Part shown: positions 33,303 through 60,599 of the stretch, one piece after another
Position numbering within the stretch: the stretch's first letter is position 1
Layout: each line of letters starts with the position of its first letter
Virus record (IMG/VR): IMGVR_UViG_3300049215_000771
Coordinates: 62,001-126,000 of that record
Length of the DNA: 64,000 nt
Strand: one strand, 5' to 3'
Made by a program: the position numbers and the translations under genes
Notes under the pieces: model-generated
Databases searched by the model: none
What the model was told of the DNA's origin: nothing
Seen by the model: the letters and a program-made list of their open reading frames with translations, nothing else

Positions 33303-33614
33303 ATGTTTTCCGCCGAAGATTTCACCGTTCAAAACTCGGAATTTCTCATCCGGCGTGGCTGGCGCATGTGGAGTCGTTCGGACTTGTTCGAGGGCAAGAT
33401 GTTGTTGCTTTGCCCGGTGGATGATTTCAAGAACATCCCCAAGGGAACCAGGATGACGCATATTTGCGGTGGACATGCGGTGAAGGGCAAAGACAAGATC
33501 ACAATGGACCACAAGGGCGGCGTGCTGGCTTACGGCATTTTGCTGGAAGACATCATTGTTCCCGACGAGAACAAGAAGTACCGAAGCATCGACGATTTTT
33601 CCGAACCTGGCTAA
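33303..33614 (+). CDS. hypothetical protein with C-terminal YRSIDD motif
   Basis: Ends ...NKKYRSIDDFSEPG; motif at 33579-33596. Confidence 0.65.
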   Translation: MFSAEDFTVQNSEFLIRRGWRMWSRSDLFEGKMLLLCPVDDFKNIPKGTRMTHICGGHAVKGKDKITMDHKGGVLAYGILLEDIIVPDENKKYRSIDDFSEPG

Positions 33615-33694
33615 TCGGCTAAAGTCCCGCCCAGCTTTGGTCGATATTACTGTAGAACGACAACGTAACTTTCAACAACGAACAGGAAACCATC

Positions 33695-35356
33695 ATGGGA
33701 CGTAAACTCGAAAAGTCCACCTACCCATCCGGCCACGGCCCGAACGATTTCCAGTGTTTCGGCCCGCCCGCCACCGAAGACGGGAATTTCGACACCTGCA
33801 AGATCGCCGACATGGGTTCCTTCTCCCAAGAGGAGAAAGATTCCAACAAGTATTATCACGCCGCCGTCGTCAAGTCGAAGATCAACGGCAACTACTACAC
33901 CTACTTCGAGTGGGGCCGGGTCGGGGCGTCCAAACCTGCTTTCCAGTTTGTCGAGTGTGGCAGCGAGGCCGACGCCCAGCGGGAATTCGCCGATCAGTGC
34001 CACGAGAAGAACGACAAGCGTGGCGTTTGGACAACCGTGGCGGGCCATCGCACGCTGACGGCCAAACCCAAGAAGGACGTGTATCTCGTCCGCCAACTCG
34101 CCACCCGTTCCACGGGTCTGCCCGATGCCAAAACCATCAAGCACACTGAGGGCGCAAAGCCGAAGCCGAAGCCCGGCAAGCCCGACGATGCCAGCGCTAC
34201 CGACAAGCCGACGAAGAAGGAAGCGAAACCAGCGGCCCCAGCCCGTCGTGCCGATCCAGTCACCAGTAAATTGCTTCAGGATTTGATCGGCGGCACGATC
34301 TCCTACACCCGTGGGAGCATGGCCGACGACTCGATTCCGACGCAAAATGCCATCGACATCGCTCGTGATGTTCTCACCGAGGCCGAGAAGCGACTGTTGA
34401 AGGTCGGCAACAGCCTCGATGACCAGATCGCCGACAAGGAACTTCGCCAGTTGTCCGGGGAACTGTACCGTCGCATCCCGAAGAAGAAGCCGGTTGGGAC
34501 GCCGGACAAGGTGTGGATTCTGTCCAGCGAGAATATCTTCTCCTGGCGGAACGACCTGGACGCCTTCGAGTCGGCGTTGTCGGCCCAGGCCGGCATTGAC
34601 GAACAGGCCGGTCAGGTTGCCGATCCCTTCCACGGCCTGCCCCTCACGATGGAATACATCGACCCGAAAACGGAACTCGGCAAGTTCCTCTACTTCTGGT
34701 GGCCGAAGGCGACGGCCAATCGCCACTACCACCTGAAAGACATGAAGATCAAGAATATGTGGAAGGTGGACCGCTTCGGCGACCCGGAGAAGGTTCGCCG
34801 CTCGCAGGACCGCATCGCCACCGAGATCGGCAAGGCGGCGCTGAAGGAACGGCCCTTGTTCCAGCCGTCCGAACGCTACGATGTTCCCGACATCAACGAG
34901 CGCAAGCTGTTCGGTCAGACCAACACGGCGCTGTTGTTTCACGGCACCCGTTCCGTCAACGTGAAGGGCATCTTGGAGAAGTCGCTGTTGCTGCCGAAGC
35001 AACTGGTCGGCGTTTCCATCAACGGGGCCATGTTTGGCCCTGGTCTGTATTGGGCCGATGACTGGAAGAAGTCGGCAGGCTACACCAGCTTGTCGGGTTC
35101 GCTCTACTCGGCGGGCTATGGCGGGGTTGCCGGTCGCCATGCCTTCATGTTCGCCGCCGATGTCGTCGTGGGGCAGCCACACGTTGCTCCTGGGCCGCAC
35201 GGTTATACCAGCCCGCCGAAGGGCCATCACTGTGTCTTCGGTATGGGCCGCAACCACACCAGCAGCCGCCAGAACAGCGGCGTGGAGAACAACGAGTGGA
35301 TCGTGTTCTCCGGTGAACAGTGCCGTCTCCGCTACCTGGCGGAATTCACGGCGTAA
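33695..35356 (+). CDS. WGR-domain poly(ADP-ribose) polymerase-like ADP-ribosyltransferase
   Basis: FEWGRVG (WGR); helical regulatory segment LSGELYRRIP; catalytic LLFHGT (H), MFGPGLYWAD (Y), NNEWIVF (E). Confidence 0.9.
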   Translation: MGRKLEKSTYPSGHGPNDFQCFGPPATEDGNFDTCKIADMGSFSQEEKDSNKYYHAAVVKSKINGNYYTYFEWGRVGASKPAFQFVECGSEADAQREFADQCHEKNDKRGVWTTVAGHRTLTAKPKKDVYLVRQLATRSTGLPDAKTIKHTEGAKPKPKPGKPDDASATDKPTKKEAKPAAPARRADPVTSKLLQDLIGGTISYTRGSMADDSIPTQNAIDIARDVLTEAEKRLLKVGNSLDDQIADKELRQLSGELYRRIPKKKPVGTPDKVWILSSENIFSWRNDLDAFESALSAQAGIDEQAGQVADPFHGLPLTMEYIDPKTELGKFLYFWWPKATANRHYHLKDMKIKNMWKVDRFGDPEKVRRSQDRIATEIGKAALKERPLFQPSERYDVPDINERKLFGQTNTALLFHGTRSVNVKGILEKSLLLPKQLVGVSINGAMFGPGLYWADDWKKSAGYTSLSGSLYSAGYGGVAGRHAFMFAADVVVGQPHVAPGPHGYTSPPKGHHCVFGMGRNHTSSRQNSGVENNEWIVFSGEQCRLRYLAEFTA

Positions 35357-35417
35357 CCATCACGATGATCTAACGGAGTGGGATGGAAAATTCCCACTCC
35401 GTTACTTGGAGGAAACC

Positions 35418-38433: not shown

Positions 38434-38487
38434 CTGAGCATTGACAGCGAGCCTGGTTGTTATCCCAAATCACAACGGAGGATAGTG

Positions 38488-40164
38488 ATGAGCGACACCG
38501 TTACCCTGACCCTGGAAGAGTTGGAAGAAATCAAGGCCCAACTCGTCGAAATGGATGCCGTTCTCACTCGGCTCCTGGCCCAGCCCCTTGTTTATGCAAC
38601 GGTCGTGAAGGCCGACAACAAGTTTCATCTGGACGCCTTCGAGCAGGGCGACCGGATGTTGGTGATCGACAAGAACCTTCGCAAGCAGAAGAAGTTCTAC
38701 GGCAAGATCGCCAGCCAGGGCGTCGATGACGAGGGCTGGGTCATCTTGGAATATCCCACGGGCGGGCGTGACCGGCTCAACATCGGCCTCAACGGGGAAT
38801 TGCCGCAGGTGAAACTGATCGGCAAGGACGACGGCACCAACGTCGTCATCGCCCATGACGGCAAGCTGTTCGAGGTTCACGGCTTGCCGGGGAAGGAATT
38901 CCATCCGTCGTCCACCGTCAAGGTGGATATGGAAACGAAGCAAATCCACGACGATGCTGGCGTCAGCGCCGCTGGTGACGTGGCCTACATCAAGACCATC
39001 GTGGACGAGGAACACGTCGAAGTGGAGAGCAACGGCCACAGCCGGGTCGTCATCCACGGCGTCAAGGACGAGGAAGGCGAATCCGTCAAGATCGAGCCGG
39101 GCGACCGGGTGATGTTGGATCACACCAACACCATCACCGTCCGTGTTCTCGAAAAGGACAACGCCGACCGCTTCAACCTGATCGAGCAGCAGAACGTCAC
39201 CTGGGACCAGATCGCCGGCCTGGGCGACGTGAAGGAATCGCTCGTCGAAGCGCTGGAACTGCCCTACCAGCACCCGGACATCTTCAAGTTCTACAACAAG
39301 AAGCCGCCGAAGGGCGTGTTGCTCTACGGCCCTCCGGGTTGTGGCAAGACCCTGTGTGCCAAGGCCGCTGCCAACAGCATGGCCCGCATCCACGGCAAGG
39401 AAAACTACCAGTCCGGGTTCATTTACGTCAAAGGCCCGGAATTGTTGAGCAAGTGGGTCGGCCAGACCGAGGCCGAAATCCGCCAACTGTTCGTCCGTGG
39501 CCGGGAACACTACAAGAAGCACGGCTATCCCGCCTTGCTGTTCATCGACGAAGCCGACGCCATCCTCCCGATGAGGGGTTCCGGCAAGTCGTCGGACGTG
39601 GAAAATACCATCGTTCCGATGTTCCTGTCGGAAATGGACGGCCTGGAGGAAGCACACCTGATGGTGTTGCTCGCCACCAACCAGCCGAAGCGTCTGGACC
39701 CCGCCGTGACTCGTGAAGGTCGTGTGGACCGGAAGGTTCGTGTCGGTCGTCCGACCGCCAAGAACGCACACGAATACTTCAACCTGCACATGAAGGGGAT
39801 TCCGGTCGCCGAGGGGTTCGAGGCGGAAGAACTGACGGCCCTGACGATCCGTGACCTGTTCAGCGAGAAGCGGGGTCTGTACACCGTCCAGTACAAGAAG
39901 CAGACCCATCTGTTCAAGCTGGGCGATGCCGTCAGCGGCTCGATGATCGCAACCATCGTGGATCACGCCACGAGCCAGGCCATGAAGCGTGACCTGCACG
40001 CCGGCACGCAAACGGGTGTGAACCACACCGACTTCCAGGACGCCGTGAACGGAATCTTCAAGCATCACGTCGAACTCAACCCGACGTTCGATCTCGAAGA
40101 ATTCTGTGATGCCAACAGCATCAACCGGAACGAGGCGACGTTCTCGAAACTGGTTCACGCATAA
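38488..40164 (+). CDS. AAA+ ATPase, ARC/Mpa (proteasome ATPase)-like
   Basis: N-terminal coiled coil and OB-like region (IEPGDRVMLD), GPPGCGKT, VKGPELLSKWVG, FIDEAD, SSDVENTIVP.FLSEMDG, LDPAVTREGRVD. Confidence 0.8.
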   Translation: MSDTVTLTLEELEEIKAQLVEMDAVLTRLLAQPLVYATVVKADNKFHLDAFEQGDRMLVIDKNLRKQKKFYGKIASQGVDDEGWVILEYPTGGRDRLNIGLNGELPQVKLIGKDDGTNVVIAHDGKLFEVHGLPGKEFHPSSTVKVDMETKQIHDDAGVSAAGDVAYIKTIVDEEHVEVESNGHSRVVIHGVKDEEGESVKIEPGDRVMLDHTNTITVRVLEKDNADRFNLIEQQNVTWDQIAGLGDVKESLVEALELPYQHPDIFKFYNKKPPKGVLLYGPPGCGKTLCAKAAANSMARIHGKENYQSGFIYVKGPELLSKWVGQTEAEIRQLFVRGREHYKKHGYPALLFIDEADAILPMRGSGKSSDVENTIVPMFLSEMDGLEEAHLMVLLATNQPKRLDPAVTREGRVDRKVRVGRPTAKNAHEYFNLHMKGIPVAEGFEAEELTALTIRDLFSEKRGLYTVQYKKQTHLFKLGDAVSGSMIATIVDHATSQAMKRDLHAGTQTGVNHTDFQDAVNGIFKHHVELNPTFDLEEFCDANSINRNEATFSKLVHA

Positions 40165-40224: not shown

Positions 40225-40253
40225 TTTACAAGGCATGATTCTTGGGGTATGAT
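40225..40253 (+). promoter_or_regulatory. sigma70-type promoter
   Basis: TTTACA-17-TATGAT. Confidence 0.7.
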
Positions 40254-40259
40254 ACAGCC

Positions 40260-41489
40260 ATGTTCAATCTCTCCGAGGCGCTGGAGGCTCTGAAGGGCCA
40301 CGACGAGTTTGCAATCAAGGCTTATGACGGCCTGGTTACGCTTGACTACATTTTATGCTTCCCAGGCTCGTTCGATGCCGCAGAAGCCGAAATCGTGGCT
40401 CGTGGAGAGGCACAGGCTCACCGGGATGCAGAAATTCGCCGGAACTGTCGAGGGGTGACTTTCGACGAAAAGACTGGCGAGATCGTGTCTTTGCCGCTGC
40501 ACAAGTTTTTCAACATCGGCCAGACCGAGCAAACGCAGTTCCGCCACTTAACGTCCTGCAAGGCACGGATTTACGAGAAGATGGATGGTTCGATGATCCA
40601 CTTCTTCGTCCACCCGCACCGTCAGGAGTTGCTGGCGTCCACCTGCCGCTCGACGCAAACGCCCCAGGCGCAGGAGTCGCTGGGGCTGGCGAAGAAGAAC
40701 CAGCTTGTCTACGGCAAGATTCTCGCTATCATCGGTGAGGGTTGGACTCCGGTTTTCGAGTACGTCGCTGCACACAACCAGATCGTGGTGCAATATCCAC
40801 GTCCCCGGTTGGTGTATCTGATCTCTCGTCACCGGAAGACGGGCGAGTATAAGTTCCACGAAGGGTTCCCGGATACGGCAACGTATTTTGAGTTTCCCTT
40901 CCAGGACATCAACAACTACTTGGACCGCAAGGAATTCGAGGGCTACGTTTGCCACCTGGAATTCACGGAAGATGTTTCGTGCATCAAGGCGAAGAAGGGT
41001 GACAAGACGATTGTGAAGGCCAAGACGCCCTGGTACTTGGAGCGTCACCGGGCAGTGGATGCCCTGATGAGGCCGACCTACAAGTTGTACCAGGTCGTGT
41101 TCGATGGTGTCATGGACGACCTGTTGCCAACGGCTCCTGATCGGTTCAAGCCGAAGCTGGTTGGAATCTACGAAGAGGCGCAGCGTGATCTACTGAACGA
41201 GCAGCGCCGTGTTGAGAAGTTGTTCGATCTTTCGTTGGCGGCAGTGGAATCCGTTTGGAGCAGGACGTTCTCTCACGGAAAGCTGCCGGAACGCAAGATG
41301 GATCGGGTTCTCCGCAAGGCGTTCGTTGAGTACATCCAGCAGCACTACAAGTCGGATTTCTCTCTGCTGATGGCCCTGTATCTCGGCAATGACCCGTCTC
41401 CCACCATCAAGGACCGATTGATGGAAGGGTACAAGCTAAAGTACCCAAATCGGCTTTTTGCTGATTTGGAAGAAGAAGCTGTCGCATGA
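40260..41489 (+). CDS. T4 Rnl1-like RNA ligase
   Basis: CRGVTFD, LHKFFN, YEKMDGSMI, VFEY, EGYV, KAKTPWY. Confidence 0.88.
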   Translation: MFNLSEALEALKGHDEFAIKAYDGLVTLDYILCFPGSFDAAEAEIVARGEAQAHRDAEIRRNCRGVTFDEKTGEIVSLPLHKFFNIGQTEQTQFRHLTSCKARIYEKMDGSMIHFFVHPHRQELLASTCRSTQTPQAQESLGLAKKNQLVYGKILAIIGEGWTPVFEYVAAHNQIVVQYPRPRLVYLISRHRKTGEYKFHEGFPDTATYFEFPFQDINNYLDRKEFEGYVCHLEFTEDVSCIKAKKGDKTIVKAKTPWYLERHRAVDALMRPTYKLYQVVFDGVMDDLLPTAPDRFKPKLVGIYEEAQRDLLNEQRRVEKLFDLSLAAVESVWSRTFSHGKLPERKMDRVLRKAFVEYIQQHYKSDFSLLMALYLGNDPSPTIKDRLMEGYKLKYPNRLFADLEEEAVA

Positions 41490-41783: not shown

Positions 41784-42512
41784 ATGCCAATCCAGATTGG
41801 AAACATCGAGAAGAAAACCGACTCCCGCTGGCTCAACCTGTTTGAAGTCGATTATATCGGCATGACAGGCAAACCCGGCAAATGGCAGTTCGCCTCACGC
41901 AATCCCAACCCACAGCCCGGCCCCAATCCCATCACATCCAACGCCGTCATCATCGTTCCCCTCCTCAAAGATGGGCGCAAGCGGAAACTCGTCGTCATCA
42001 AGGAATTTCGCATTCCCCTGGGTGATTACGAGTATGCCGTCCCTGCCGGCCTGTTCGATCCGGGCGAGGAACTTGTCAAAACCGTCAAGCGGGAACTGAA
42101 GGAAGAAACGGGCTTGAAAGGGACGAAGATTCTCGTCACCAGCCCCGCCGTGGTTTCCAGCGCTGGCCTTTCCGATGAAGCCGTCAACTACGTTTTCGTC
42201 GAATGCACTGGCATCCCTGACAACAGTGGCAACGAGGGTACTGAAGACATCACCATCGAAGTTCTGGACATCGAAGGCGTGGCGAAACTCCGACGCTCCG
42301 GGGCCAAGATGTCTTCCAAGTTGTGGCCCATCCTCCTCATGTTCGAGGCGATGGGAAAAATCGCCATTCCCAGGAGCATCAGAGATGAAAATCGTAAGGC
42401 ATTACAACGAGGAAGAACTGAAGCAACTGCTGACCAAAGCGGTGGAGTTTCCGCAGAAGAACCGGCAGTTGAAGGTGAAGGAGATCAAGTTCCGAGTCAC
42501 GGAGCAGCGTGA
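41784..42512 (+). CDS. Nudix hydrolase, ADP-ribose pyrophosphatase-like
   Basis: KEFRIP...PAGLFDPGE.......RELKEETG; SSAGLSDE. Confidence 0.85.
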   Translation: MPIQIGNIEKKTDSRWLNLFEVDYIGMTGKPGKWQFASRNPNPQPGPNPITSNAVIIVPLLKDGRKRKLVVIKEFRIPLGDYEYAVPAGLFDPGEELVKTVKRELKEETGLKGTKILVTSPAVVSSAGLSDEAVNYVFVECTGIPDNSGNEGTEDITIEVLDIEGVAKLRRSGAKMSSKLWPILLMFEAMGKIAIPRSIRDENRKALQRGRTEATADQSGGVSAEEPAVEGEGDQVPSHGAA

Positions 42513-42582
42513 CGCCCACGACCGGCCTGGATTCGGGAACGTCGTCGAAGCGGAGATCGAAGTGGAGGAAGAAGAAAGATGA
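42385..42582 (+). CDS. small hypothetical protein
   Basis: AGGAG RBS; overlaps the Nudix tail; ATGA overlap with the next gene. Confidence 0.5.
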   Translation: MKIVRHYNEEELKQLLTKAVEFPQKNRQLKVKEIKFRVTEQRDAHDRPGFGNVVEAEIEVEEEER

Positions 42583-43580
42583 ACCTAAAAGACAAAGTAC
42601 GAGGAACCTTCCTGGGCCTCGCCATTGGCGATGCCCTGGGGAAAGCTACGGAATCGCTGTCGTTCAACACCATCATGGAGAAGTTCGGCAGGATTACCGA
42701 CTACATCAGCAATCCCCACCACAAGTATTTCGATGGCGCTCCCGTTGGCTCCTGGACTGACGACACTCAGCTTTCTCTTGCTGTGGCTCGTGGCATTGCC
42801 CACAAAGGCGAATTCGACCTGGATGCCATTGCCGAGGAACATTGTGTTGAGTTCATGAAAACTGTGGCTGGTTGGGGCAACACTACCAGAGAAGCCATCG
42901 CCAAGATCGTGGACGGTGGGCACTGGTCCCAGGCCAGCCTCACAGACCAACCCAACCGAGGCGTCGGCAATGGCGTGGCAATGAAGGTTGCCCCTGTTGG
43001 TTGCTACATGGCCTTGACCAACCCCGAATGCAACAACCCGCAGTGGGGCGAGGATGTGAAAAAGCTGATGAAGCTGGCGACTATGACGCACTTCACCAGC
43101 ATGGCGATTACTTCGGGATTCGCCCAAACCTTCGCCGTGTTCAAGTGCATGATGTCGGACCCCGAAAACTTCGATGTCAAGTCCTTCATCCGAACCATCA
43201 ACGGCGCAGGCATGATGGGGCGGCGGTACTTGTTCAAGACCATTACCCAGGATGACATTGCCAACAGGTTCGGCCTGTTGGAAAAATACGACGAGTACCC
43301 GCCCGAACGCATCATCGCCGAGTTGAAGGGTAGCTGCTACGTCTACGAGTCGCTGCCGTTCACCTTCATGTTCTTCGTCCGTAACCCACACAGTATTGAA
43401 ACGCTGTACGATGTGGTGACGGCGGGCGGGGACACGGACACCAATGGCTCCATGCTCGGCGCTCTCCTGGGCGCTCTGCACGGCACAGACATCTTTCCCG
43501 AACATCTGGTTGACGGCCTCCGTGAACGTGAGATGGTCATGGAAGTCGCCGACAGGATGTACGACAAGTTGAAGGGCTAA
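42579..43580 (+). CDS. ADP-ribosylglycohydrolase (DraG/ARH family)
   Basis: GLAIGDALG, WTDDTQ, GNGVAMK.AP, GGDTDT. Confidence 0.92.
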   Translation: MNLKDKVRGTFLGLAIGDALGKATESLSFNTIMEKFGRITDYISNPHHKYFDGAPVGSWTDDTQLSLAVARGIAHKGEFDLDAIAEEHCVEFMKTVAGWGNTTREAIAKIVDGGHWSQASLTDQPNRGVGNGVAMKVAPVGCYMALTNPECNNPQWGEDVKKLMKLATMTHFTSMAITSGFAQTFAVFKCMMSDPENFDVKSFIRTINGAGMMGRRYLFKTITQDDIANRFGLLEKYDEYPPERIIAELKGSCYVYESLPFTFMFFVRNPHSIETLYDVVTAGGDTDTNGSMLGALLGALHGTDIFPEHLVDGLREREMVMEVADRMYDKLKG

Positions 43581-45570: not shown

Positions 45571-46002
45571 ATGATGGACGTTTGCAACAACCGGAAGGCC
45601 CGCTATGATTACCATATCCTCGATACTGTCGAGGCGGGGATCGTATTGCAGGGCACTGAAGTCAAGGCTCTCCGGGCCAAACTTGCCTCATTGGAAGGTT
45701 CTTACGCCGTCATTCGTGACGGCGAAGTGTGGATGATTGGCTCTCATGTTGAAGAGTACGACCACGGCAACCATCACAACCACAACCCCAAGCGGGAGCG
45801 GAAGCTGTTGGTCAAGCGACACGACATCAAGAAACTTTCTGGTGAGGTTCGTGTGAAGGGAAAAACCCTCGTGCCCCTTCGCATTTACTTCTCCGGGCGC
45901 TGGGCCAAGGTGGAACTGGCGCTGGCGCAGGGCAAGCAGACGCACGATAAACGGCAAACCCTGAAAGAAAGGGAGCAGCGTAAGGAAATGAAGGGCTATT
46001 GA
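45571..46002 (+). CDS. smpB: SsrA-binding protein
   Basis: NRKARYDY, EAGIVLQGTEVK, RKLL, LVPL.IYF, GKQTHDKR. Confidence 0.95.
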   Translation: MMDVCNNRKARYDYHILDTVEAGIVLQGTEVKALRAKLASLEGSYAVIRDGEVWMIGSHVEEYDHGNHHNHNPKRERKLLVKRHDIKKLSGEVRVKGKTLVPLRIYFSGRWAKVELALAQGKQTHDKRQTLKEREQRKEMKGY

Positions 46003-46475
46003 TGGAGAATATGGATCGAATTGTCGAGGTATGTCAGCGCCTCAATTTTGAATCGGATAACTGGAATCTACGCTACGAATACGCTCAGTATTTTGAAGAT
46101 GCTGACATGGTGGAAGAATGCCTCGCCCAAAGGTGGATGGCCGACAATCAGAAATGTCCGGGTCCACCATGCGTTCAAGAAGCCCACCCAGGCGAGGCGA
46201 CCTGGTTTTCTGCGGAAAATAGGGAAGATATGCGGTGGTCTTTCCCTCATTTCGTTAAATGCGACAAGGTTGATAGGAAATGGTGTCTTCCTGTTGATAT
46301 TTTCAAAAGGCTGGATGGATTCATCACGGATCGGCGGGATGGAGGGTTTCACAACAAGTGGGCAAAATCTTGGAACAGTCGGACGGATGCGGAACTAGCC
46401 CTCGCTGCGGCCTTGCCACGAAGAAAAAGAAAGTTTCGGTCGATTGATGACAATTGGAGGGCGTCAGGTTGTTAG
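45999..46475 (+). CDS. hypothetical protein with C-terminal FRSIDD motif (TAG stop)
   Basis: Ends ...RKRKFRSIDDNWRASGC; motif at 46434-46451. Confidence 0.6.
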   Translation: MMENMDRIVEVCQRLNFESDNWNLRYEYAQYFEDADMVEECLAQRWMADNQKCPGPPCVQEAHPGEATWFSAENREDMRWSFPHFVKCDKVDRKWCLPVDIFKRLDGFITDRRDGGFHNKWAKSWNSRTDAELALAAALPRRKRKFRSIDDNWRASGC

Positions 46476-49715: not shown

Positions 49716-49948
49716 TGAAGAAACGGGTCAAAGCACTGTTGTTGAGGTACTGGACTTGGTACAATAACTTGAACGAACCTTGGCGAATGTTGATGATGCT
49801 TCTGATGTGTTTGCCCTTGTTTGCTTCAACTATTGTCTCCGAGTTTGTCGAGATGCCGTACAGACCGTTCGTGATGATCGGGTGCGTTCTCGTCCCATTC
49901 GGCCTGATCTGTACCAGGTGGTGGGCACACTCTAAGGACAATCCATGA
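49715..49948 (+). CDS. membrane protein
   Basis: Two hydrophobic segments. Confidence 0.5.
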   Translation: MKKRVKALLLRYWTWYNNLNEPWRMLMMLLMCLPLFASTIVSEFVEMPYRPFVMIGCVLVPFGLICTRWWAHSKDNP

Positions 49949-50490
49949 AGAAGCCGAAGAAGAAAAAGACCAAGGTGACTACCAAGAAGACGCCTGCCTT
50001 TGCAAAGGCAAAGGCGACGGTGAAAGCAAAGGCCGCAGCCGCCAAGATTGTACCGATGGTGGGTGACGCTGAACTGCTGAAGCTGGCCTGTGAGTTCGAC
50101 CTGGGGCCATTTCCCATCAGCAACGGACGCTACAAGTGGTGGGAGAAGTTTCCCAGGGAAGCCCACAGGAACCATGTTTACGTCAAGAACATGGGCAACC
50201 CCAACAAGGAAGACGATCCTGCTGCGCCCGACCGCTGGGGCATTTTCATGGAGGGCATGTCTTCCTGTCTCAACAAGGAAGGCGAGTGGCAGCACCAGGG
50301 GATGCCGAGCGGTCGTCCCGACGACTTCTACGATAAGTGCCGGTACGATACCGTCCACGAGGCCATCGCCTACTACCGGCGCTGGTGCAAGGCGATCTGT
50401 GAGTGGGCGGAACAGAAAGTGGCAAGCGCTCCCAACAAGGACAAGGTGATCCTGAATTGGGACGAGTGCCCGGACATGCCGAAGTTCTAA
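49945..50490 (+). CDS. hypothetical protein with Lys/Ala-rich N-terminus
   Basis: MKKPKKKKTK...; ATGA overlap. Confidence 0.6.
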   Translation: MKKPKKKKTKVTTKKTPAFAKAKATVKAKAAAAKIVPMVGDAELLKLACEFDLGPFPISNGRYKWWEKFPREAHRNHVYVKNMGNPNKEDDPAAPDRWGIFMEGMSSCLNKEGEWQHQGMPSGRPDDFYDKCRYDTVHEAIAYYRRWCKAICEWAEQKVASAPNKDKVILNWDECPDMPKF

Positions 50491-50507
50491 CCCGAAAGGA
50501 ACGTCCA

Positions 50508-51317
50508 ATGGACGAGAAAACTCCCGATACGACAACTGAAATGAAGGCGAACCTGGGCAAGCCCACGGCCATCGTCTTCTCGTTCGACACCACCGGCTCG
50601 ATGCAGCCCTGTATCCAACAGGTCAGGCAGAAGTTGCGTGACCTTGTTGAGATGATGCGACAGGACATCCCTGACCTGCGCATCGGCCTCATCAGCCACG
50701 GCGACTACTGCGACGGCCCCAACGCCATCCACGTCCTCGATCTGACGACGGACCTGGAAAAGATCATGCAGTTCATCAACGAGACGCCCAACACGGGCGG
50801 CGGGGACGCCCCGGAATGCTACGAGTTGGCGCTGAACCGGGCCAACAGCATGTCCTGGCCCGCCGAGGGCGGCAGCCTGGTGTTGATCGGCGACGACGAG
50901 CCGCACGATCCCAACTACCCACAGAACACCGATCATCTGGACTGGCGGGAGGAAGTGAAGGCATTGAAGGCGAAGAAGGTCAACGTCTTCCCCCTGCAAT
51001 GCCTTCAGGCCGACTACAAGAAGGGTGCGAACCTGTTTTGGGAACAGGTTTCTGGCGAGGCTGGCACGCCGCTCCTGATCCTCGAAAACTTCAAGGATTC
51101 CGCCAGTACGCTGGAAGCCGCTGCCTATGCCGCTGGTTCGGCTGCGACAGGGGATGCCGCTTTGTACAAGGGCTACCTGGGCAAGTATGCCGCCGCCCCA
51201 GCCTGTGCTTTCGATGGCGAATCCGTGGGCAGTGCCGAGAATCTGTGTTCCAACCGTGGCAAGCTGGATGCCTGGACGGAGACGAACACCACAACGGATT
51301 CCAGCAAGACCGAGTAA
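50508..51317 (+). CDS. von Willebrand factor A domain protein
   Basis: FSFDTTGSM (MIDAS DxTxS), GDYCD, GGGDAPE, LIGDDEPH. Confidence 0.85.
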   Translation: MDEKTPDTTTEMKANLGKPTAIVFSFDTTGSMQPCIQQVRQKLRDLVEMMRQDIPDLRIGLISHGDYCDGPNAIHVLDLTTDLEKIMQFINETPNTGGGDAPECYELALNRANSMSWPAEGGSLVLIGDDEPHDPNYPQNTDHLDWREEVKALKAKKVNVFPLQCLQADYKKGANLFWEQVSGEAGTPLLILENFKDSASTLEAAAYAAGSAATGDAALYKGYLGKYAAAPACAFDGESVGSAENLCSNRGKLDAWTETNTTTDSSKTE

Positions 51318-52357: not shown

Positions 52358-52739
52358 GGCTGGGGCCAACCCTTACTTTGGCAAGGCGTGGAATTGCAAC
52401 ATCGAAAAATACCACCCGCAGACGGAAACGCCTGTTGGGACGCCTTGCTCGTATTGTGACGAAGAAATCGTGGAGGGCGACCAGGGATTCATCATCCCGC
52501 ATGGTGAAGCCATTACGCAAAACCAAGAAGGTGTCTTCGATCAGATGGTTGCGGTGTTCCGCCCCGTCCATCTCGATTGCTTCCTCCGACAAATCTTCGG
52601 GTCTGTTGGGCATCAGAAGAAAACCTGTTCGTGTTTCGGCGGCACTGAAGAAGACCCGCCCGGCATGACGAAACGTGAAGCAGCTTCGGCGGCAGTGAGA
52701 ATGTACGAGTCCCAATATCTGCGAGGAGTTCCACAGTGA
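52347..52739 (+). CDS. Cys/His-containing hypothetical protein
   Basis: CSYC, HLDC, CSC. Confidence 0.6.
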   Translation: MDDKAGANPYFGKAWNCNIEKYHPQTETPVGTPCSYCDEEIVEGDQGFIIPHGEAITQNQEGVFDQMVAVFRPVHLDCFLRQIFGSVGHQKKTCSCFGGTEEDPPGMTKREAASAAVRMYESQYLRGVPQ

Positions 52740-54817
52740 ACAGCGTGAAATTGTACAGCAACGGCACGGCGGTCATTTCCCGGCAATACAAGCTGGAGAA
52801 AGGTCCGAACAAGATTTCCATCCCCGTCCGCAAGGACGACCTGGATGAAGTCGTCGCCAGTGTGGGCGTGTTCGGCAACGTCACCACGCCTGTCCCGCCG
52901 AGCTACACCCCCGTCAACGCCAAGGACACGAAGCTGGACATCAACCCGGCCAGTGCCCTGAAGGACACGGCCACCAAGCTGGCCGGCAGTCAGGTCGGCA
53001 TCACCAAGGCCAGCGGTCCCGCCGTTTACGGCACGCTCGTCGGTGTCCACACCTACGAGGAAACCAACGCCAACGGCATGACGACCGAGCGCCTGAAGGT
53101 CGTTGTGCAGACCGAGAACGGCATCCAGATGGTCGCCGAGAACGACATCAGCTTCCTCAAGTTCACGGACCCGGCCACGCAGGACGAGTACAACAAGGCG
53201 CTGGCGGCTTCTTACCAGAAGATCAAGCCCGACAGCAGCTTCGTGGACCTGACCATCGTGCCGAACGAGGACAACGTGAAGTCGGCGGTGGTCGGCTACG
53301 CCACGCCGGTCGCCGCCTGGAAGCCCCGCTATCAGTTGCGGTCCACCAACGGCGTGTGGGAACTTCAATCCGAGGCGGTCGTGGACAACGACACGGACGA
53401 TGCCTGGCTGGATTCCATCATCTCCGTCATCACGGGCGAACCCATCACCTTCCAGACCGATCTGGCGGAAATCCGTCGTCCGGCTCGCACCAGGGTCAAC
53501 GTCGTCAGCGATCAGGCCCAGGGCGCTGTTGGCGTCGAAGACACCGTGGCCCGTGCCAAGGTCGCCAACGTCCGTGCCCGTGGTGGGGCGGCGATGAGGC
53601 TCCAGTCGCTCGGTGCCCCCGTGCCGGCAGCGGCGATGGGGTTTGCTGCCGAGTCCCTGGAAGACGGCGAGTACGAAGCAGCAGGTGGCAGCGCCAACTA
53701 CTGTGCCGATTCCATCGAAGTGAAGCGACAGGCCGACGCTCCGCAGGCCGAGGTTCGGGAGAGCGGCGATTTCTCCATCTTCACGTCGCCGAATCCCGTC
53801 AGCATCGCCTCCAAGAAGTCGGGCATCATCCCGATGTTCCGTGCTTTCTTGCAGGAGGCGAAAACCGTCCTGGTCTACAACAAGAAGAACCATCCGACCC
53901 GTCCGTTCCGGGCGCTGGAAATCGTCAACGAGACGAAGCACCCGCTCGGCAAGGGCGTGTGTGAAATCTACCTGGACGGCGATTTCCAGGGCAAGTCCAT
54001 CCTGGAAGCCACAGGACCGGGCCAGCCCGCTTTCCTGGTTCACGCCAAGGAAACCGGCGTGAAGTGCCACGCCACTGAGGGCCAGGTGGAGAGCCGGCGT
54101 GTCGGCATCAAGATCAAGGATGGCGTCGTGACCTGTGAGCAGGCCAGCCGCACCGAGACGACTTACACCGTCACCAACAACAAGAACGAGCCGTTCACCT
54201 ACAACATCGAACACGCTCGTCGGCTGCCCCACTCCAAGTGTGGCGTCGAGGTCAGCGAAGGTGAAGCGAAGGTTTCCGACACGCCTTCCGGCTGGCGGAT
54301 CACCCTTTCGCTGCCGGCCTTCACTGGCCCGAAAACGGGCGAAGTCGAAGTGACCATCACCGAGAACTCCGTCGATGCCCAGGCGTGGGGTATCAACAAC
54401 GGCAACGGCCCGCTGTGGATTCAGCAGAACATCATCGCCGTCAAGAACCCGCTGTCCCGCAACGGCGGCATCAAGAAGATCATCGACTTGCAGGCGAAGG
54501 TGGACGATCTCGACAGCCAGATCGAGGAGGCCGAGGAACGGGAGGAGACGCTGACGAAGGAGCAGGAGAACTTGCTCAAGCTGATCCCGAACGGCCACGC
54601 TGACCAGGCCAACGAGTGGAAAACGGAACTCGGCACCAACAAGGCCGATCTGAAGACCCTCCAGCGGGAGACGCTGCCGGGCCTGAAGAAGCAACAGCGT
54701 GAGGCGACTCAGGCCGTTCAGGAAGCCTTGAACGATCTCGTCGCCAACTGGTCCGAGAAGGTCAAGGACAACGGCAACAACGAGCCGGTTGGGGCCGGCG
54801 CTGCTTCCGAGCAGTAA
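52736..54817 (+). CDS. DUF4139/DUF4140-like protein with C-terminal coiled coil
   Basis: VKLYSNG, AAWKPRYQL, AVVDNDT.DAW....SVITGEP, PVSIASKKSGIIP. Confidence 0.7.
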   Translation: MNSVKLYSNGTAVISRQYKLEKGPNKISIPVRKDDLDEVVASVGVFGNVTTPVPPSYTPVNAKDTKLDINPASALKDTATKLAGSQVGITKASGPAVYGTLVGVHTYEETNANGMTTERLKVVVQTENGIQMVAENDISFLKFTDPATQDEYNKALAASYQKIKPDSSFVDLTIVPNEDNVKSAVVGYATPVAAWKPRYQLRSTNGVWELQSEAVVDNDTDDAWLDSIISVITGEPITFQTDLAEIRRPARTRVNVVSDQAQGAVGVEDTVARAKVANVRARGGAAMRLQSLGAPVPAAAMGFAAESLEDGEYEAAGGSANYCADSIEVKRQADAPQAEVRESGDFSIFTSPNPVSIASKKSGIIPMFRAFLQEAKTVLVYNKKNHPTRPFRALEIVNETKHPLGKGVCEIYLDGDFQGKSILEATGPGQPAFLVHAKETGVKCHATEGQVESRRVGIKIKDGVVTCEQASRTETTYTVTNNKNEPFTYNIEHARRLPHSKCGVEVSEGEAKVSDTPSGWRITLSLPAFTGPKTGEVEVTITENSVDAQAWGINNGNGPLWIQQNIIAVKNPLSRNGGIKKIIDLQAKVDDLDSQIEEAEEREETLTKEQENLLKLIPNGHADQANEWKTELGTNKADLKTLQRETLPGLKKQQREATQAVQEALNDLVANWSEKVKDNGNNEPVGAGAASEQ

Positions 54818-54883: not shown

Positions 54884-55579
54884 ATGCAAGTCTGGCTTGA
54901 ACCTATTGAGATGGTCGGGGCATCAGTTCCGATCCCCGCCGTTCTCACACGAATTCAACTGGCGTGTTGTGATGCCGGGTTTCAAAGTCAGAAACTCAAC
55001 CAAATTCTCAATGAAGCCTGCATGGTCATGCCCGGCAATCTCGAACAAGCCAAGGGCAACTACGATCCTAGCGTTTACGCTATGGAGGTTATACAAACCG
55101 AGCGTATTCGAGTGGGATTTTTCGACAGGCTCCGTGATGCTCTCGATGAAGTTGCCCAGGCCGCTGGGGACACGATTGATTGGTGTCTGTTATTCATGGA
55201 TTACGACATCCATTTCGCTCGGCATGACGCCTTCGTGAACGGCCTGAAATGTTTTCCGTACTTGGAATGCTATCTTGTTGTCGCCGACGCCGACTCGCCA
55301 TTGATGAACAACTGGAGGAATCCACGGAAATTATCGGTACAAGTTATCACAGAGGCCACACTGCAAACAATGGCCCCCTCGATGGGTTTCCAGAATCCGA
55401 TTGGAATTCAAGGCATATTTGCGCAACAACCATTGCCGGCCCCAGCAGCGAGTGGTAATATGCCCGCTGTCTCGCCTTCTGGTTGGCTGAATGACTATGA
55501 AGACCCTGAAGAAGTGGAAGAAGTGGTCAAGCCACAACCAAAGCCCAAGACAAAATATCGGAGCATCGACGACCCGTGA
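54884..55579 (+). CDS. hypothetical protein with C-terminal YRSIDD motif
   Basis: Ends ...PKTKYRSIDDP; motif at 55556-55573. Confidence 0.65.
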   Translation: MQVWLEPIEMVGASVPIPAVLTRIQLACCDAGFQSQKLNQILNEACMVMPGNLEQAKGNYDPSVYAMEVIQTERIRVGFFDRLRDALDEVAQAAGDTIDWCLLFMDYDIHFARHDAFVNGLKCFPYLECYLVVADADSPLMNNWRNPRKLSVQVITEATLQTMAPSMGFQNPIGIQGIFAQQPLPAPAASGNMPAVSPSGWLNDYEDPEEVEEVVKPQPKPKTKYRSIDDP

Positions 55580-55589
55580 GGATTATGTC

Positions 55590-56207
55590 ATGTGGCGAAA
55601 ATTTATCTGGCTGCTTCGACGATTGATCGGGCGGAAACTGCCTCCTGCCCCTGCTACGCTGCCAAAAGGCACCAGATACTACAATCCCAATATCGAAGCA
55701 GGACGTTTCGGCGTCCTGGTTGTGGAGAAGGAACCGACACCGAGGACAATTTTCGGAGCAAGGGGGACGACGCATTACTTGGCGTTTCCGTATATTGTAT
55801 TTATCATTCGATTTTCGGTGCAGCATCGGAGCGGCAAGCCGGTGTATATTTTCGATCACCTGCAAGTTGGTTTCTCGATGACTTCATTGACTTCTGCCAA
55901 TGATTATATTTCTGCATTGCCGCTCTCAAATTACGAGGGCAGTTTGCCCCTTGGTGTGTGTTTGGGAGAAGGGCCAGCAAGGTACAGGCACAGTTACTCC
56001 AGTTACGATTCGCCCGAAGAAATGGCGAACTCAATCATCGCTTACTACTGGTCCAGTAGCTTCACGAAACTGCAACCTGAAGAAATGAAACGCTGGGCCA
56101 AGAAATCACCAGACAAGTTGTCCAAGTTGTTCTACAACACCGACACGCTGCGGCGGATTGCAATGCTTCCAAAACACGAGGAGTTGGGCTATGGGACACA
56201 GCACTGA
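55590..56207 (+). CDS. prokaryotic E2 (family D)-like protein
   Basis: EPTPRTIF...LAFPYIVF...LPLSNY....GVCLG. Confidence 0.45.
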   Translation: MWRKFIWLLRRLIGRKLPPAPATLPKGTRYYNPNIEAGRFGVLVVEKEPTPRTIFGARGTTHYLAFPYIVFIIRFSVQHRSGKPVYIFDHLQVGFSMTSLTSANDYISALPLSNYEGSLPLGVCLGEGPARYRHSYSSYDSPEEMANSIIAYYWSSSFTKLQPEEMKRWAKKSPDKLSKLFYNTDTLRRIAMLPKHEELGYGTQH

Positions 56208-56691
56208 GCAGCATGTTCGAGTCGGCACGAGCATCATCGTGGTTCGTGAGGGCAAGGTGTTGGCGGGCCGGCGAAAAGGGTCGCACGCCGAAGGTTTGAT
56301 CTCTTTCCCTGGCGGGCATCTCGATTTTGGTGAGACTTGGGAAAAATGTGCCTTCCGAGAACTCGAAGAAGAATGTGGGGACCAGTTACAGGTAAAGTTG
56401 AGGCCGCAAGCTAACATTGCCTCGCTTGGTCAGTCGCCGCCTGTCGGCCCACTAAGCTGGCGGCTGGACTGGTTCACTACGAACGACATCATGCCTCAGT
56501 ACGGCAAGCACTACATCACGATCTTCATGGTCGCTGATTGGGTTTCCGGGGAGGCTATCAATACCGAGCCTGACAAGTGTGAGGGCTGGGAATGGATCAC
56601 CTTCGACGAACTGAAGGCGCTGGGTGATAAGGCCGCTCAGTGGATTCCCATCAACCTCATCGAAGCCTACCGAGGAAGGATTGGCATATGA
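56191..56691 (+). CDS. Nudix hydrolase (MutT-like)
   Basis: FPGGHLDFGETWEKCAFRELEEECG; EPDKCEGWEW. Confidence 0.88.
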   Translation: MGHSTEQHVRVGTSIIVVREGKVLAGRRKGSHAEGLISFPGGHLDFGETWEKCAFRELEEECGDQLQVKLRPQANIASLGQSPPVGPLSWRLDWFTTNDIMPQYGKHYITIFMVADWVSGEAINTEPDKCEGWEWITFDELKALGDKAAQWIPINLIEAYRGRIGI

Positions 56692-58139: not shown

Positions 58140-58142
58140 GAC

Positions 58143-58171: not shown

Positions 58172-58190
58172 GCGGGAGGAGGACAGACCG

Positions 58191-59148: not shown

Positions 59149-59157
59149 GGAAAAGCC

Positions 59158-59388: not shown

Positions 59389-59392
59389 GACT

Positions 59393-59463
59393 GCCCCGTT
59401 GGTACATTGGCTGTGCCGTGGCCTCTAAAGCCACAGAAGTCGGTTCGATTCCGGCACGGGGTA
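59393..59463 (+). tRNA. amber suppressor tRNA, anticodon CUA (copy 1)
   Basis: GCCCCGT/ACGGGGT acceptor, GTGGC-CTCTAAA-GCCAC (CTA at 59425-59427), GTCGG-TTCGATT-CCGGC, A73. Confidence 0.85.
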
Positions 59464-59466
59464 CAA

Positions 59467-59539
59467 GCCCTGGTAGCTCAGTGGTCAGAGCGGTTGACTC
59501 TAAATCAACGTGTCGTGGGTTCGATCCCCACCCAGGGCG
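59467..59539 (+). tRNA. amber suppressor tRNA, anticodon CUA (copy 2)
   Basis: GCCCTGG/CCAGGGC acceptor, GCTC/GAGC D stem, GTTGA-CTCTAAA-TCAAC (CTA at 59500-59502), GTGGG-TTCGATC-CCCAC, G73. Confidence 0.88.
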
Positions 59540-59560
59540 CTGCATATCATAGGGAGGTTC

Positions 59561-59656
59561 ATGATGAGACTTCGTTTCCACGAACAGGTTCCCACTATTG
59601 GCGGTTCCTACAGCGGGTATCACGGCGGTTGGCGAACTTCCGAGTCGCTTCTTTAA
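59561..59656 (+). CDS. 31-aa ORF starting MMRLRF
   Basis: GGGAGG RBS; in frame with the next gene, separated by TAA. Confidence 0.4.
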   Translation: MMRLRFHEQVPTIGGSYSGYHGGWRTSESLL

Positions 59657-59665
59657 GGTCGTCCG

Positions 59666-60262
59666 ATGAGACTGAGATTCCAACACGACAATGTGGAGGA
59701 TGGCCAGGGCTGCGGTACAATTCTAAGTTTGGAACCACAGTTCCGTACCATCTACACAATGGGTAACGGGTATAGCACACGCAGTAGGTACGATGGAAAC
59801 ATTGTTACCCTGCCGTGGCCACATTTGATCTTTGTGTTTCGCTACACGAAGGTTGAGGGCGGCTATATGTATGGTGGTTTGTACGGCAACGGCCTGCGGG
59901 TGTTGTTGAAATCGGAGCCACTGCGCTCTTTCGATGACCTGGTGGCATACGCTCCTACCGAACATCACGGTGGAGGGCTGGCGTGTACCGATCATGGATG
60001 GGATAATTCCTTGTTCAAAAACCCACAGGAGTTGATGGGAACGATTCTGGAGATTTGGTGGGGGAGCGCCCATCACATGCGTCCGCCTCTCGACATTTCT
60101 GCATGGAAGAAGATGTCGGTAGAAGAAGTCGTAACCTACAAGTGGGGAGAAGTTGCCAAACTTTCTACCTTGCTGCCGTTTTCTGGCGAACTTATCGACA
60201 AGGACGTTGGTATTCTTCCAAGTGTGTTGAAAAAAGGACCGAAATTGTATGGCCGCAGATGA
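59666..60262 (+). CDS. prokaryotic E2 (family D)-like protein, paralog of 55590..56207
   Basis: LEPQFRTIY...LPWPHLIFVFRY...LAC. Confidence 0.4.
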   Translation: MRLRFQHDNVEDGQGCGTILSLEPQFRTIYTMGNGYSTRSRYDGNIVTLPWPHLIFVFRYTKVEGGYMYGGLYGNGLRVLLKSEPLRSFDDLVAYAPTEHHGGGLACTDHGWDNSLFKNPQELMGTILEIWWGSAHHMRPPLDISAWKKMSVEEVVTYKWGEVAKLSTLLPFSGELIDKDVGILPSVLKKGPKLYGRR

Positions 60263-60599
60263 TTGGGTTGGGAAACGCTTTCCAGAACCGCCTGAACGCC
60301 TCACCCGTCCATACTTTGACCCTGACCATGTTGGTCGGGGTTATTGTATGTACTGCCGTGACGATCACGACAGTCCCGGACCAGTTTTCATGTGGCGAGA
60401 TAACAACACCCTTCTTCTCAAGCCAGGCCACATGAACTGTGTTTTGTGTGGGCAGCGGTACTTCGCCGAACTTGAAGACTTGGAATTGTTGTGTGGTTTT
60501 CCGCCCACGATGAACAACATCTACGATTTCGAGACGATCTACGCCCGGTGGAAGGCTCGCTACCGTTCCATTGACGACCCCTGGCAATCCAGTTCTTAG
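60249..60599 (+). CDS. Zn-binding hypothetical protein with C-terminal YRSIDD motif (TAG stop)
   Basis: CMYC, CVLC; ends ...KARYRSIDDPWQSSS; motif at 60561-60578. Confidence 0.65.
   Translation: MAADDWVGKRFPEPPERLTRPYFDPDHVGRGYCMYCRDDHDSPGPVFMWRDNNTLLLKPGHMNCVLCGQRYFAELEDLELLCGFPPTMNNIYDFETIYARWKARYRSIDDPWQSSS

What the first reader, a model, noticed from the sequence alone, without database searches (positions are those of the whole stretch)
33579..60578. Four dissimilar proteins share a C-terminal [YF]RSIDD motif conserved at protein level only
Seen: KKYRSIDDFSEPG* (33303..33614), KRKFRSIDDNWRASGC* (45999..46475), TKYRSIDDP* (54884..55579) and ARYRSIDDPWQSSS* (60249..60599). Each copy lies within 7 residues of the stop and follows a basic stretch. 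The codons differ (Ser AGC/TCG/AGC/TCC; Arg CGA/CGG/CGG/CGT; Ile ATC/ATT), so this is not a DNA repeat, and I see no other similarity among the proteins. Inference: a short linear motif acting as a docking, sorting or modification tag. Candidate readers in this window are the ARC-like ATPase, ClpX, and the PARP/ARH pair (RS in a basic context is a known Ser-ADP-ribosylation acceptor context in eukaryotes). It could also bind a host hub or target proteins to the virion. I know no described system with this tag.
Basis: partly seen in the sequence, partly recalled or inferred. Interest (0 to 1): 0.88.

Follow-up and report, generated by a model that had tools for sequence, protein, structure and literature searches.

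The report
Shared tail tag on phage proteins
A six-residue peptide ([Y/F/W]-R-S-I-D-D) is kept by selection at the tail of at least six unrelated small proteins of a roughly 0.67-Mb phage, and of proteins in other phages, so it looks like a portable docking tag, most likely linked to head assembly, though what reads it is unknown.

Summary
[YF]RSIDD occurs four times in the six-frame translation, against 0.003 expected. All four copies lie 1-7 residues before a stop, on four proteins with no detectable similarity to each other, and synonymous codons differ.

The tag is under protein-level selection. Orthologues of all four families (50-78% identity; the P3 family down to about 30%) keep it while the preceding linker drifts, and Ser switches codon box (AGC/TCN). 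More distant P3 homologues lack the tail, so it is a modular add-on at the end of a disordered linker.

Two further carrier families turned up in other parts of the same genome, one in a relative, and several in unrelated phage contigs. In those unrelated contigs the tagged bodies are fragments of head-module proteins: major head protein, maturation protease, and a portal-position protein. 1.74 Mb of unrelated viral DNA contained no hit.

Ser-ADP-ribosylation is disfavoured, because Ser is replaced by Asn or Thr in homologues.

Best reading (about 0.4): a prohead-directed targeting or docking tag, working like T4's capsid targeting sequence but placed at the C-terminus. Main rival: a tether to an AAA+ unfoldase (ClpX or the ARC-like ATPase).

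The parts
33297..33614 (+). P1, a 103-105 aa carrier. Tag YRSIDD at 33579-33596, followed by FSEPG and a TAA stop. It sits directly upstream of the WGR-PARP gene.
   Evidence: Orthologues P0124-P0127 (56-78% identity) all keep KKYRSIDD. P1-PARP adjacency is conserved in L014.
45999..46475 (+). P2, a 158 aa carrier. Tag FRSIDD at 46434-46451, followed by NWRASGC and a TAG stop. It sits just downstream of SmpB.
   Evidence: The orthologue L005 4381-4830 (57% identity) ends ...KRKRNYRSIDDKWQVPKW*.
54884..55579 (+). P3, a 231 aa carrier. It has a folded domain of about 170 aa, a disordered linker of about 55 aa, a basic patch, then tag YRSIDD at 55556-55573, then P and a TGA stop.
   Evidence: AF2 gives pLDDT above 90 for residues 1-170 and 52-73 for 171-231. 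Ten tail-bearing homologues down to 30% identity keep the tag; more distant ones lack the tail. No fold match in PDB or BFVD.
60249..60599 (+). P4, a 116 aa Cys4 (zinc-ribbon-like) carrier. Tag YRSIDD at 60561-60578, followed by PWQSSS and a TAG stop. It sits directly upstream of an ADP-ribosylglycohydrolase gene.
   Evidence: Orthologues in L004, L006 and L010 (48-50% identity) end RFRSIDDDWKPSD*, RWRSIDAEFKPSLD* and RYRSIDEDWKVAPND*. The P4-ARH-DUF179 gene order is conserved.
20884..22230 (+). Candidate reader (untested): a phage ClpX with a zinc-binding N-domain, GYVG pore loop, RKH loop and an MGF (IGF-type) loop.
   Evidence: Pfam hit. Motifs read in the sequence.
38485..40164 (+). Candidate reader (untested): a classic-clade AAA ATPase with an N-terminal coiled coil and beta domains, ARC/Mpa-like.
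   Evidence: Pfam AAA hit. The longest single-stretch PDB matches are Mpa/ARC. Conserved in L014 at 82% identity and in L222.
50403..51317 (+). Candidate reader (weak, untested): a VWA-domain protein with a DxTxS MIDAS-like motif. It is syntenic in four tag-bearing relatives but absent from the same slot in L013.
33695..35356 (+). WGR-PARP with an H-Y-E triad. It carries no tag itself.
60635..61582 (+). ADP-ribosylglycohydrolase directly downstream of P4, with its own promoter at 60600.

Best explanation
The peptide, with consensus [KR]-x-[YFW]-R-[S/T/N]-I-D-[D/E]-x-[W/F], is a portable docking tag. It sits in a disordered tail, usually C-terminal and once internal, has been attached to many unrelated protein bodies, and is read as a peptide by one common partner.

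My leading mechanism is that the partner belongs to the assembling phage head: scaffold or core, the inner face of the major head protein, the portal, or the prohead protease. On this reading the tag brings its carriers into or onto the prohead. That works like the capsid targeting sequence shared by T4 IPI-III, Alt, gp67 and gp68, and like the C-terminal targeting tails of the HK97 and SPN3US prohead proteases, except that the tag is at the C-terminus. P1-P4 would then be head-internal (ejected) or head-assembly accessory proteins. The I-D-[D/E] core could also serve as a site for a T4-type prohead protease, whose consensus is L/I-x-E.

Shown: the motif is real, non-random, selected at protein level, modular, placed in a disordered tail, present in several phage lineages, and attached to fragments of head proteins in other phages.

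Inferred: that a head component reads it, that carriers are packaged, and that any cleavage happens.
For: Enrichment and controls.

Conservation: the tag is the best-conserved segment in each family. Identity for motif / body / preceding 10 residues is 1.00 / 0.66 / 0.61 for P1, 0.73 / 0.32 / 0.21 for P3, and 0.72 / 0.55 / 0.28 for P4. Orthologues switch Ser codon box and Arg box.

Modularity: distant P3 homologues end right after the domain. The L303 and L310 carriers share only the 12-residue tag.

Disorder: AF2 predicts a disordered tail for P3.

More carriers in the same genome: L063 3403-4197 (internal copy) and L231 1587-2081 (-). One more in a relative: L011 7225-7569.

Head link: all carriers found outside this clade have bodies matching pieces of head-module proteins.
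- L311 3263-3778 matches the head maturation protease core (E 2e-20).
- L315 10091-10357 matches major head protein profile positions 357-406 (E 2e-14).
- L315 10539-10802 matches major head protein positions 179-236 (E 2e-11).
- L310 and the second L303 carrier match positions 352-396.
- The first L303 carrier resembles the C-terminal end of the 640-aa protein in the portal position of L315.

Precedent: the T4 CTS and the SPN3US protease propeptide are described in PMC7411985. The HK97 protease tail (Duda et al. 2013) is from my own knowledge; the reference appears in the lists seen.
Against: No head gene of the window's own phage was seen, so the link rests on other phages.

In L315 the full-length protease, the scaffold-position protein, the major head protein and the portal-position protein lack the tag. 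The tagged proteins there are fragments, and it is unclear why a phage would package those.

In the window the carriers lie among auxiliary genes (PARP, ARH, NUDIX, SmpB, RNA ligases). They sit in operons driven by the same sigma-70-type promoter as ClpX and the AAA ATPase, which looks early rather than late.

Most tags have Asp, not Glu, at the position a T4-type protease would need.

No binding test of any kind could be run.
Confidence: 0.4

Rival explanations
1. The tag is a tether to an AAA+ unfoldase, either the phage ClpX N-domain or the ARC/Mpa-like ATPase. Carriers are then short-lived substrates, or adaptors and decoys whose bodies bind a target (including head proteins, through native assembly interfaces) and whose tail hands it to the machine. 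This would work like SspB with its C-terminal XB peptide.
For: P3 has the architecture of SspB: a folded domain, a long disordered linker and a short conserved C-terminal peptide. A complete ClpX and an ARC-like AAA ATPase lie in the same 64 kb, behind the same promoter class as the carrier operons. The AAA ATPase is conserved in relatives. Variable residues after the tag, and one internal copy, fit a docking site better than a pore-engaged degron. Head-protein fragments could be decoys or binders.
Against: No sequence resemblance to known ClpX-binding peptides (own knowledge). No evidence that L303, L310, L311 or L315 encode such ATPases, although only short loci were seen. Relatives L218/L222 have the AAA ATPase but showed no tag in about 28 kb. 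Co-location in a 673-kb genome is weak evidence.
Confidence: 0.2
2. The tag docks early phage proteins onto a conserved host hub, such as RNA polymerase, the ribosome, the sliding clamp or SSB. It would then be a host-takeover motif, or a mimic of a host motif.
For: The carriers are small ORFans in early-looking operons. The precedent of unrelated T4 proteins sharing a clamp-binding C-terminal tail is own knowledge.
Against: It does not match the known clamp (QL[SD]LF) or SSB-tip (DDDIPF) motifs (own knowledge). It does not explain why tagged bodies in other phages are fragments of head proteins. In 82 pattern hits across 185,579 species genomes, the only close look-alikes were on phage-like contigs, not on recognisable cellular proteins.
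Confidence: 0.12
3. The tag is only a processing site for the prohead protease or for the papain-like peptidase at 1834-2610(-). Cleavage trims the variable C-terminal extension or separates domains, as it might in the L063 protein.
For: The I-D-[D/E] core resembles the T4 gp21 consensus L/I-x-E (own knowledge; PMC7411985). The residues after the tag vary in length and sequence, from 0 to about 10. An internal copy lies between two regions of one protein. T4-type protease homologues occur in L311 and L315.
Against: Removing 0-7 terminal residues has no obvious purpose. The L011 and P3-type carriers end 0-1 residue after the tag. Conservation extends to the aromatic residue and the Arg upstream, and to a Trp two residues downstream, which suits a binding epitope more than a cleavage site.
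Confidence: 0.08
4. The tag is an acceptor site for a covalent modification: Ser- or Arg-ADP-ribosylation by the WGR-PARP, reversed by the ARH enzymes, or phosphorylation.
For: P1 is co-operonic with the PARP and P4 with an ARH, and both adjacencies are conserved. The PARP has an H-Y-E triad. Arg is invariant.
Against: Ser is replaced by Asn or Thr in several homologues. Strict conservation of Ile and Asp and of flanking aromatics is not typical of PARP acceptor sites (own knowledge). Tagged head-protein fragments in L303/L310/L311/L315 show no ADP-ribosylation genes in the DNA seen.
Confidence: 0.05

Closest known systems
T4 capsid targeting sequence (CTS) of IPI, IPII, IPIII, Alt, gp67 and gp68
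   Same: A short terminal peptide shared by otherwise unrelated, mostly small phage proteins encoded away from the head gene cluster. It contains an [I/L]-x-acidic element. It works by docking to the prohead core (PMC7411985).
   Different: The CTS is N-terminal and is removed by gp21. This tag is C-terminal (once internal), has a different consensus with an invariant Arg and a basic run before it, and neither incorporation nor cleavage has been shown.
C-terminal targeting tails of prohead proteases (HK97 gp4; SPN3US gp245 propeptide) and encapsulin cargo-loading peptides
   Same: A C-terminal peptide on a flexible linker directs a protein to the inside of an HK97-fold shell. It is transferable to foreign cargo.
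   Different: Those signals are known for one or a few proteins per system and have other sequences. Here at least six bodies in one genome carry the tag, and the one protease-like carrier (L311) is a truncated core rather than clearly the working protease.
SspB XB peptide tethering to the ClpX N-domain
   Same: A folded binding domain, a long disordered linker and a short conserved C-terminal docking peptide. A ClpX with a zinc-binding domain is encoded nearby.
   Different: No sequence similarity. XB is basic and hydrophobic without the acidic pair. The interaction is untested.
Sliding-clamp-binding C-terminal tails (T4 gp43, gp33, gp55; bacterial QL[SD]LF)
   Same: Unrelated proteins share a C-terminal peptide that plugs into one hub.
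   Different: The consensus differs. The carriers are not recognisable replication or transcription proteins.

Membership tests
Short linear motif (SLiM) / docking tag in general | Short, lies in a disordered region, conserved at protein level while flanks drift, and occurs on unrelated proteins | tested here: met
T4-type capsid targeting sequence | Carriers are incorporated into the prohead | not testable with these tools
   Needs virion or prohead proteomics, or co-expression. The only support is indirect: head-protein-derived bodies in L303/L310/L311/L315.
T4-type capsid targeting sequence | N-terminal position, removed by the prohead protease at L/I-x-E | tested here: not met
   The tag is C-terminal or internal, and the P1-equivalent residue is mostly Asp. 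So it may work like a CTS, but it is not a member of that family.
Prohead-protease C-terminal targeting tail (HK97/SPN3US type) | The tail sits on the working prohead protease of the phage | tested here: inconclusive
   The L311 carrier matches the protease profile only over positions 48-162 of 519. The full-length protease of L315 (positions 27-190) has no tag.
ssrA-like C-terminal degron | Fixed position at the extreme C-terminus with a free carboxylate and a non-polar end (LAA type) | tested here: not met
   0 to about 10 variable residues follow the tag, and 192 follow it in L063. The tag is acidic.
SspB-XB-type ClpX tether | Binds the ClpX zinc-binding domain | not testable with these tools
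   Only single-chain prediction was available. The ClpX zinc-binding domain is present.
Ser-ADP-ribosylation acceptor (KS/RS context) | A Ser that is indispensable as the acceptor | tested here: not met
   Ser is Asn in P0132 and P0134, and Thr in P0130, L011 and L311.
DNA repeat / mobile-element scar | Nucleotide-level conservation including synonymous sites | tested here: not met
Bacterial clamp-binding or SSB-tip motif | Consensus QL[SD]LF, or a terminal DDDIPF | tested here: not met
   Read directly from the tails. The consensus sequences are from own knowledge.

The most novel reading that the evidence does not exclude
The tagged proteins form a phage-encoded targeted-delivery set. Each body is a binder or decoy: fragments of portal-like, capsid and protease proteins, plus ORFan domains such as P1-P4. 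The common tail hands whatever the body has bound (a host defence sensor that recognises capsid or portal folds, or a rival phage's head proteins) to one effector machine, such as the phage ClpX or the ARC-like unfoldase. This would be a natural adaptor-plus-handle degradation system.
Probability: 0.12. Interest if true: 0.9.

Novelty: new variant of a known kind. Interest (0 to 1): 0.68.

Why it matters
Huge uncultivated phages consist mostly of ORFans. A six-to-ten-residue tag that groups at least six of them in one genome, and links them to tagged head-protein fragments in other phages, gives a sequence-only way to sort such proteins into one pathway.

If the tag is a head-targeting signal, it would predict which proteins are packaged and ejected, that is, the first weapons to enter the host. 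It would also provide a ready cargo-loading peptide.

If it is instead a tether to an unfoldase, it would be a phage-encoded adaptor or degron code.

Tried and rejected
1. Stop-codon read-through. The window has tRNA(CUA) x2 and tRNA(UCA) plus an RF1-like fragment, and P2 and P4 end in TAG. However, orthologues end in TGA or TAA, and read-through adds only about 12 residues before the next stop. Rejected as the cause.

2. A fifth window copy at 25491-26084 (RSIEEELG). Rejected, because the orthologue has RKIEEELKK.

3. L205 4773-5108(-) (HRSIDDN). Its score of 15.9 lies within the control range, so it is left as doubtful.

4. Weakened, not excluded.

5. Close relatives in IMG/VR, JGI metagenome contigs, GTDB genomes and GenBank phages. 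None were found for P3, P4 or the 693-aa neighbour. Relatives came only from the protein collection and its assemblies.

6. Motif scan of collections with a fully degenerate pattern. Codon-restricted patterns were used instead, so those censuses are lower bounds.

7. Walking the genome through its promoter motif. This gave only about 70 kb of new sequence.

8. AF2 of P1. pLDDT was 60, too poor for a fold search.

9. P3 fold searches. No match in PDB or BFVD. P0149 and P0150 gave no PDB hit.

10. Literature search for RSIDD and for phage linear motifs. Nothing relevant.
Full report
**What the window is.**
The window is bases 62,001-126,000 of IMG/VR contig 3300049215_000771, which is 532,729 bp long. 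A sister contig, _000772, is 134,115 bp and carries the same promoter motif. One protein of the window sits on a 673,178-bp contig in another assembly, so the genome is probably about 0.67 Mb.

Nearly all genes are on the + strand. Identified genes include:
- ClpX, a sigma-70-family factor, FolD and PRPP synthetase;
- a WGR-PARP, two ADP-ribosylglycohydrolases and two NUDIX proteins;
- SmpB, three RNA ligases and RlaP;
- a classic-clade AAA ATPase of ARC/Mpa architecture, a VWA protein and a papain-like peptidase;
- an RF1-like fragment.

No head or tail gene lies in the window. No GenBank phage is similar.

The 693-aa DUF4139/MuiA-like protein has homologues at 43-61% identity in cellular contexts. 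The named ones are Planctomycetota (Isosphaeraceae, Tundrisphaera), and the neighbours in L008 are typical planctomycete genes. This is a weak hint at the host.

**The observation.**
[YF]RSIDD occurs four times in the six-frame translation, always on the + strand, and 1, 5, 6 and 7 residues before the stops of four ORFs. Composition predicts 0.003 copies.

Codons differ at synonymous sites, and the surrounding DNA does not align. With the tails removed, the proteins show no similarity to each other and match no Pfam, PHROG or NCBIfam family.

**Selection.**
Orthologues were found for all four families, and every one keeps the tag.
- P1: four orthologues at 56-78% identity.
- P2: one at 57%.
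- P4: three at 48-50%.
- P3: ten tail-bearing homologues down to 30% identity.

In each family the six tag residues are the best-conserved segment. For P3, identity is 0.73 in the tag, 0.32 in the folded body and 0.21 in the ten residues before the tag.

Between orthologues Ser moves between the AGC and TCN codon boxes, and Arg between CGN and AGG. That is hard to explain without selection on the amino acid.

Arg and Ile never vary. The first position is Y, F or W (rarely H, A or R). Ser can be Thr or Asn. The last acidic residue can be Asp, Glu or Ala. An aromatic residue often follows two positions later. A run of Lys/Arg precedes the tag.

**Modularity and structure.**
The AlphaFold2 model of P3 has a confident domain (residues 1-170, pLDDT above 90) and a disordered tail of about 60 residues that ends in the tag. 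More distant P3 homologues stop right after the domain. The tail is therefore an add-on.

The P3 domain matches nothing in PDB or BFVD. The P1 model was too poor to use.

**More carriers.**
- In other stretches of the same genome:
  - L231 1587-2081(-) ends ...RRTRRYRSIDDV*.
  - L063 3403-4197 has ...KNKYRSIDAPWNKEPPP... at residues 67-72 of 264, followed by a domain of about 190 residues. A position near the C-terminus is therefore usual but not required.
- In a more distant relative, L011, a further family ends ...KHRRTIDD*.
- A family-weighted PSSM scores every accepted carrier at 19.9 or more. 1.74 Mb of unrelated IMG/VR DNA gave a maximum of 17.6.

About 135 kb of the genome could be read, and it holds six carriers.

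**The tag in other phages.**
A codon-restricted DNA pattern run on 185,579 species genomes gave 82 hits, about the chance number. Three loci stood out as close look-alikes a few residues from a stop, and all are on phage-like contigs binned with Acidobacteriota MAGs:
- L303, with two adjacent carriers, one of which was not selected by the pattern;
- L310;
- L311.

The same kind of pattern on IMG/VR gave five hits. One was P4 itself and one was L315, which has two carriers.

These contigs share no detectable protein with the window. The tagged bodies on them are pieces of head-module proteins:
- L311 3263-3778: the core of a head maturation protease (E 2e-20).
- L315 10091-10357: major head protein profile positions 357-406 (E 2e-14).
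- L315 10539-10802: major head protein positions 179-236 (E 2e-11).
- L310, and the second L303 carrier: major head protein positions 352-396. The L303 copy is broken by a frameshift, probably an assembly error.
- The first L303 carrier: resembles the C-terminal repeats of the 640-aa protein in the portal position of L315.

L315 also has full-length versions in the usual order: the portal-position protein, the protease, a scaffold-position protein and the major head protein. None of them carries the tag. The small 88-aa protein is a copy of the last 60 or so residues of the major head protein, with the native end replaced by the tag.

**What this means for mechanism.**
The data establish a portable peptide tag read by a common partner. 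They do not identify the partner.

I rank a head-assembly partner first (0.4).
- For it: every carrier found outside the window's clade derives from a head protein. T4 gives an exact functional precedent, a short terminal peptide shared by unrelated small proteins encoded away from the head cluster, which docks to the prohead core and contains an [I/L]-x-acidic element (PMC7411985). Prohead proteases are also known to carry C-terminal targeting tails (PMC7411985; Duda et al. 2013, own knowledge).
- Against it: the tagged head proteins are fragments while the full-length ones are untagged. The window's carriers sit in early-looking operons among auxiliary genes. No head gene of this phage was seen.

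The main rival (0.2) is a tether to an AAA+ unfoldase. P3 has the architecture of SspB, both a ClpX and an ARC-like ATPase are co-expressed neighbours, and head-protein fragments would make sense as binders or decoys.

The remaining rivals are a host hub (0.12), a pure cleavage site (0.08) and a modification acceptor (0.05). The last is disfavoured by the Ser to Asn/Thr substitutions.

**Comparison with known systems.**
The tag may work like the T4 CTS or an HK97/encapsulin-type cargo peptide. It is not a member of those families, because position, consensus and (as far as can be seen) processing all differ.

No paper in the searchable library mentions this motif. I therefore class it as a new variant of a known kind of system: a shared terminal targeting or docking peptide.

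**Limits.**
- Only about a fifth of the genome was readable.
- The collection scans needed fixed codons and so undercount carriers.
- The portal assignment in L315 rests on gene order only.
- MAG binning does not prove the host.
- No interaction could be modelled, because only single chains can be predicted here.

Noticed in passing
window 653, 11793, 15860, 17271, 17887, 20816, 32595, 38405, 44406, 47665, 58143, 60600 (all + strand): A strongly conserved sigma-70-type promoter, TTTACA(AC)-N17-TAnnAT, usually written gacTTTACAACca...gGTAnnATc. It lies 27-120 nt upstream of genes including ClpX, PRPP synthetase, the AAA ATPase, the second ARH and all four carrier operons. It never occurs on the - strand. 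Across the 667 kb it clusters near this region.
   Followed up: partly
window 18837-18930, 59393-59464, 59467-59540; 1200-1778: Suppressor-type tRNAs (anticodon UCA once, CUA twice) together with a truncated RF1-like release factor that has a PxT-type 'PPT' motif and GGQ. TAG ends only 4 of 77 called genes. This suggests amber recoding or suppression at some stage of infection. The 5' part of the release-factor gene is not in frame with the rest.
   Followed up: partly
window 33695-35356, 42579-43580, 60635-61582, 41784-42512, 56158-56691, 15887-16930, 2675-3238: A dense NAD/ADP-ribose gene set: WGR-PARP with an H-Y-E triad, two ADP-ribosylglycohydrolases, two NUDIX hydrolases, PRPP synthetase and a phosphoribosyltransferase. 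The P1-PARP and P4-ARH-DUF179 gene orders are conserved in relatives.
   Followed up: partly
window 45571-46002, 3707-4846, 31447-32109, 40242-41489, 47022-47663: A phage-encoded SmpB plus an RNA-repair set (RlaP and three RNA ligases). No tmRNA gene was found in the window.
   Followed up: no
window 52736-54817; L007, L008: The 693-aa DUF4139/MuiA-like protein is 57-61% identical to homologues in plainly cellular contexts (one a 1.2-Mb contig) and 43-44% to named Planctomycetota proteins. That is closer than to some phage relatives (53%), which points to recent exchange between host and phage.
   Followed up: partly
L315 10091-10357 and 10539-10802; L303 2600-3215; L310 3244-3615; L311 3263-3778: Small stand-alone genes that are copies of pieces of the phage's own head proteins (major head protein, protease, portal-position protein), each with the tag replacing the native end. 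I know of no described role for such fragments.
   Followed up: partly
L013 about 20248-20699 (- strand): A tag-like sequence with Pro in place of the otherwise invariant Arg (KKYPSIDDNW), 25 residues from the stop, PSSM score 18.8. It may be a decayed or variant copy.
   Followed up: no
window 1834-2610 (- strand): A papain-family (C1) cysteine peptidase gene, one of the few - strand genes. It is a possible processing enzyme.
   Followed up: no
window 49945-50490: A 181-aa protein with a histone-H1-like Lys/Ala-rich N-terminal tail, just upstream of the VWA gene. This order is conserved in relatives.
   Followed up: no
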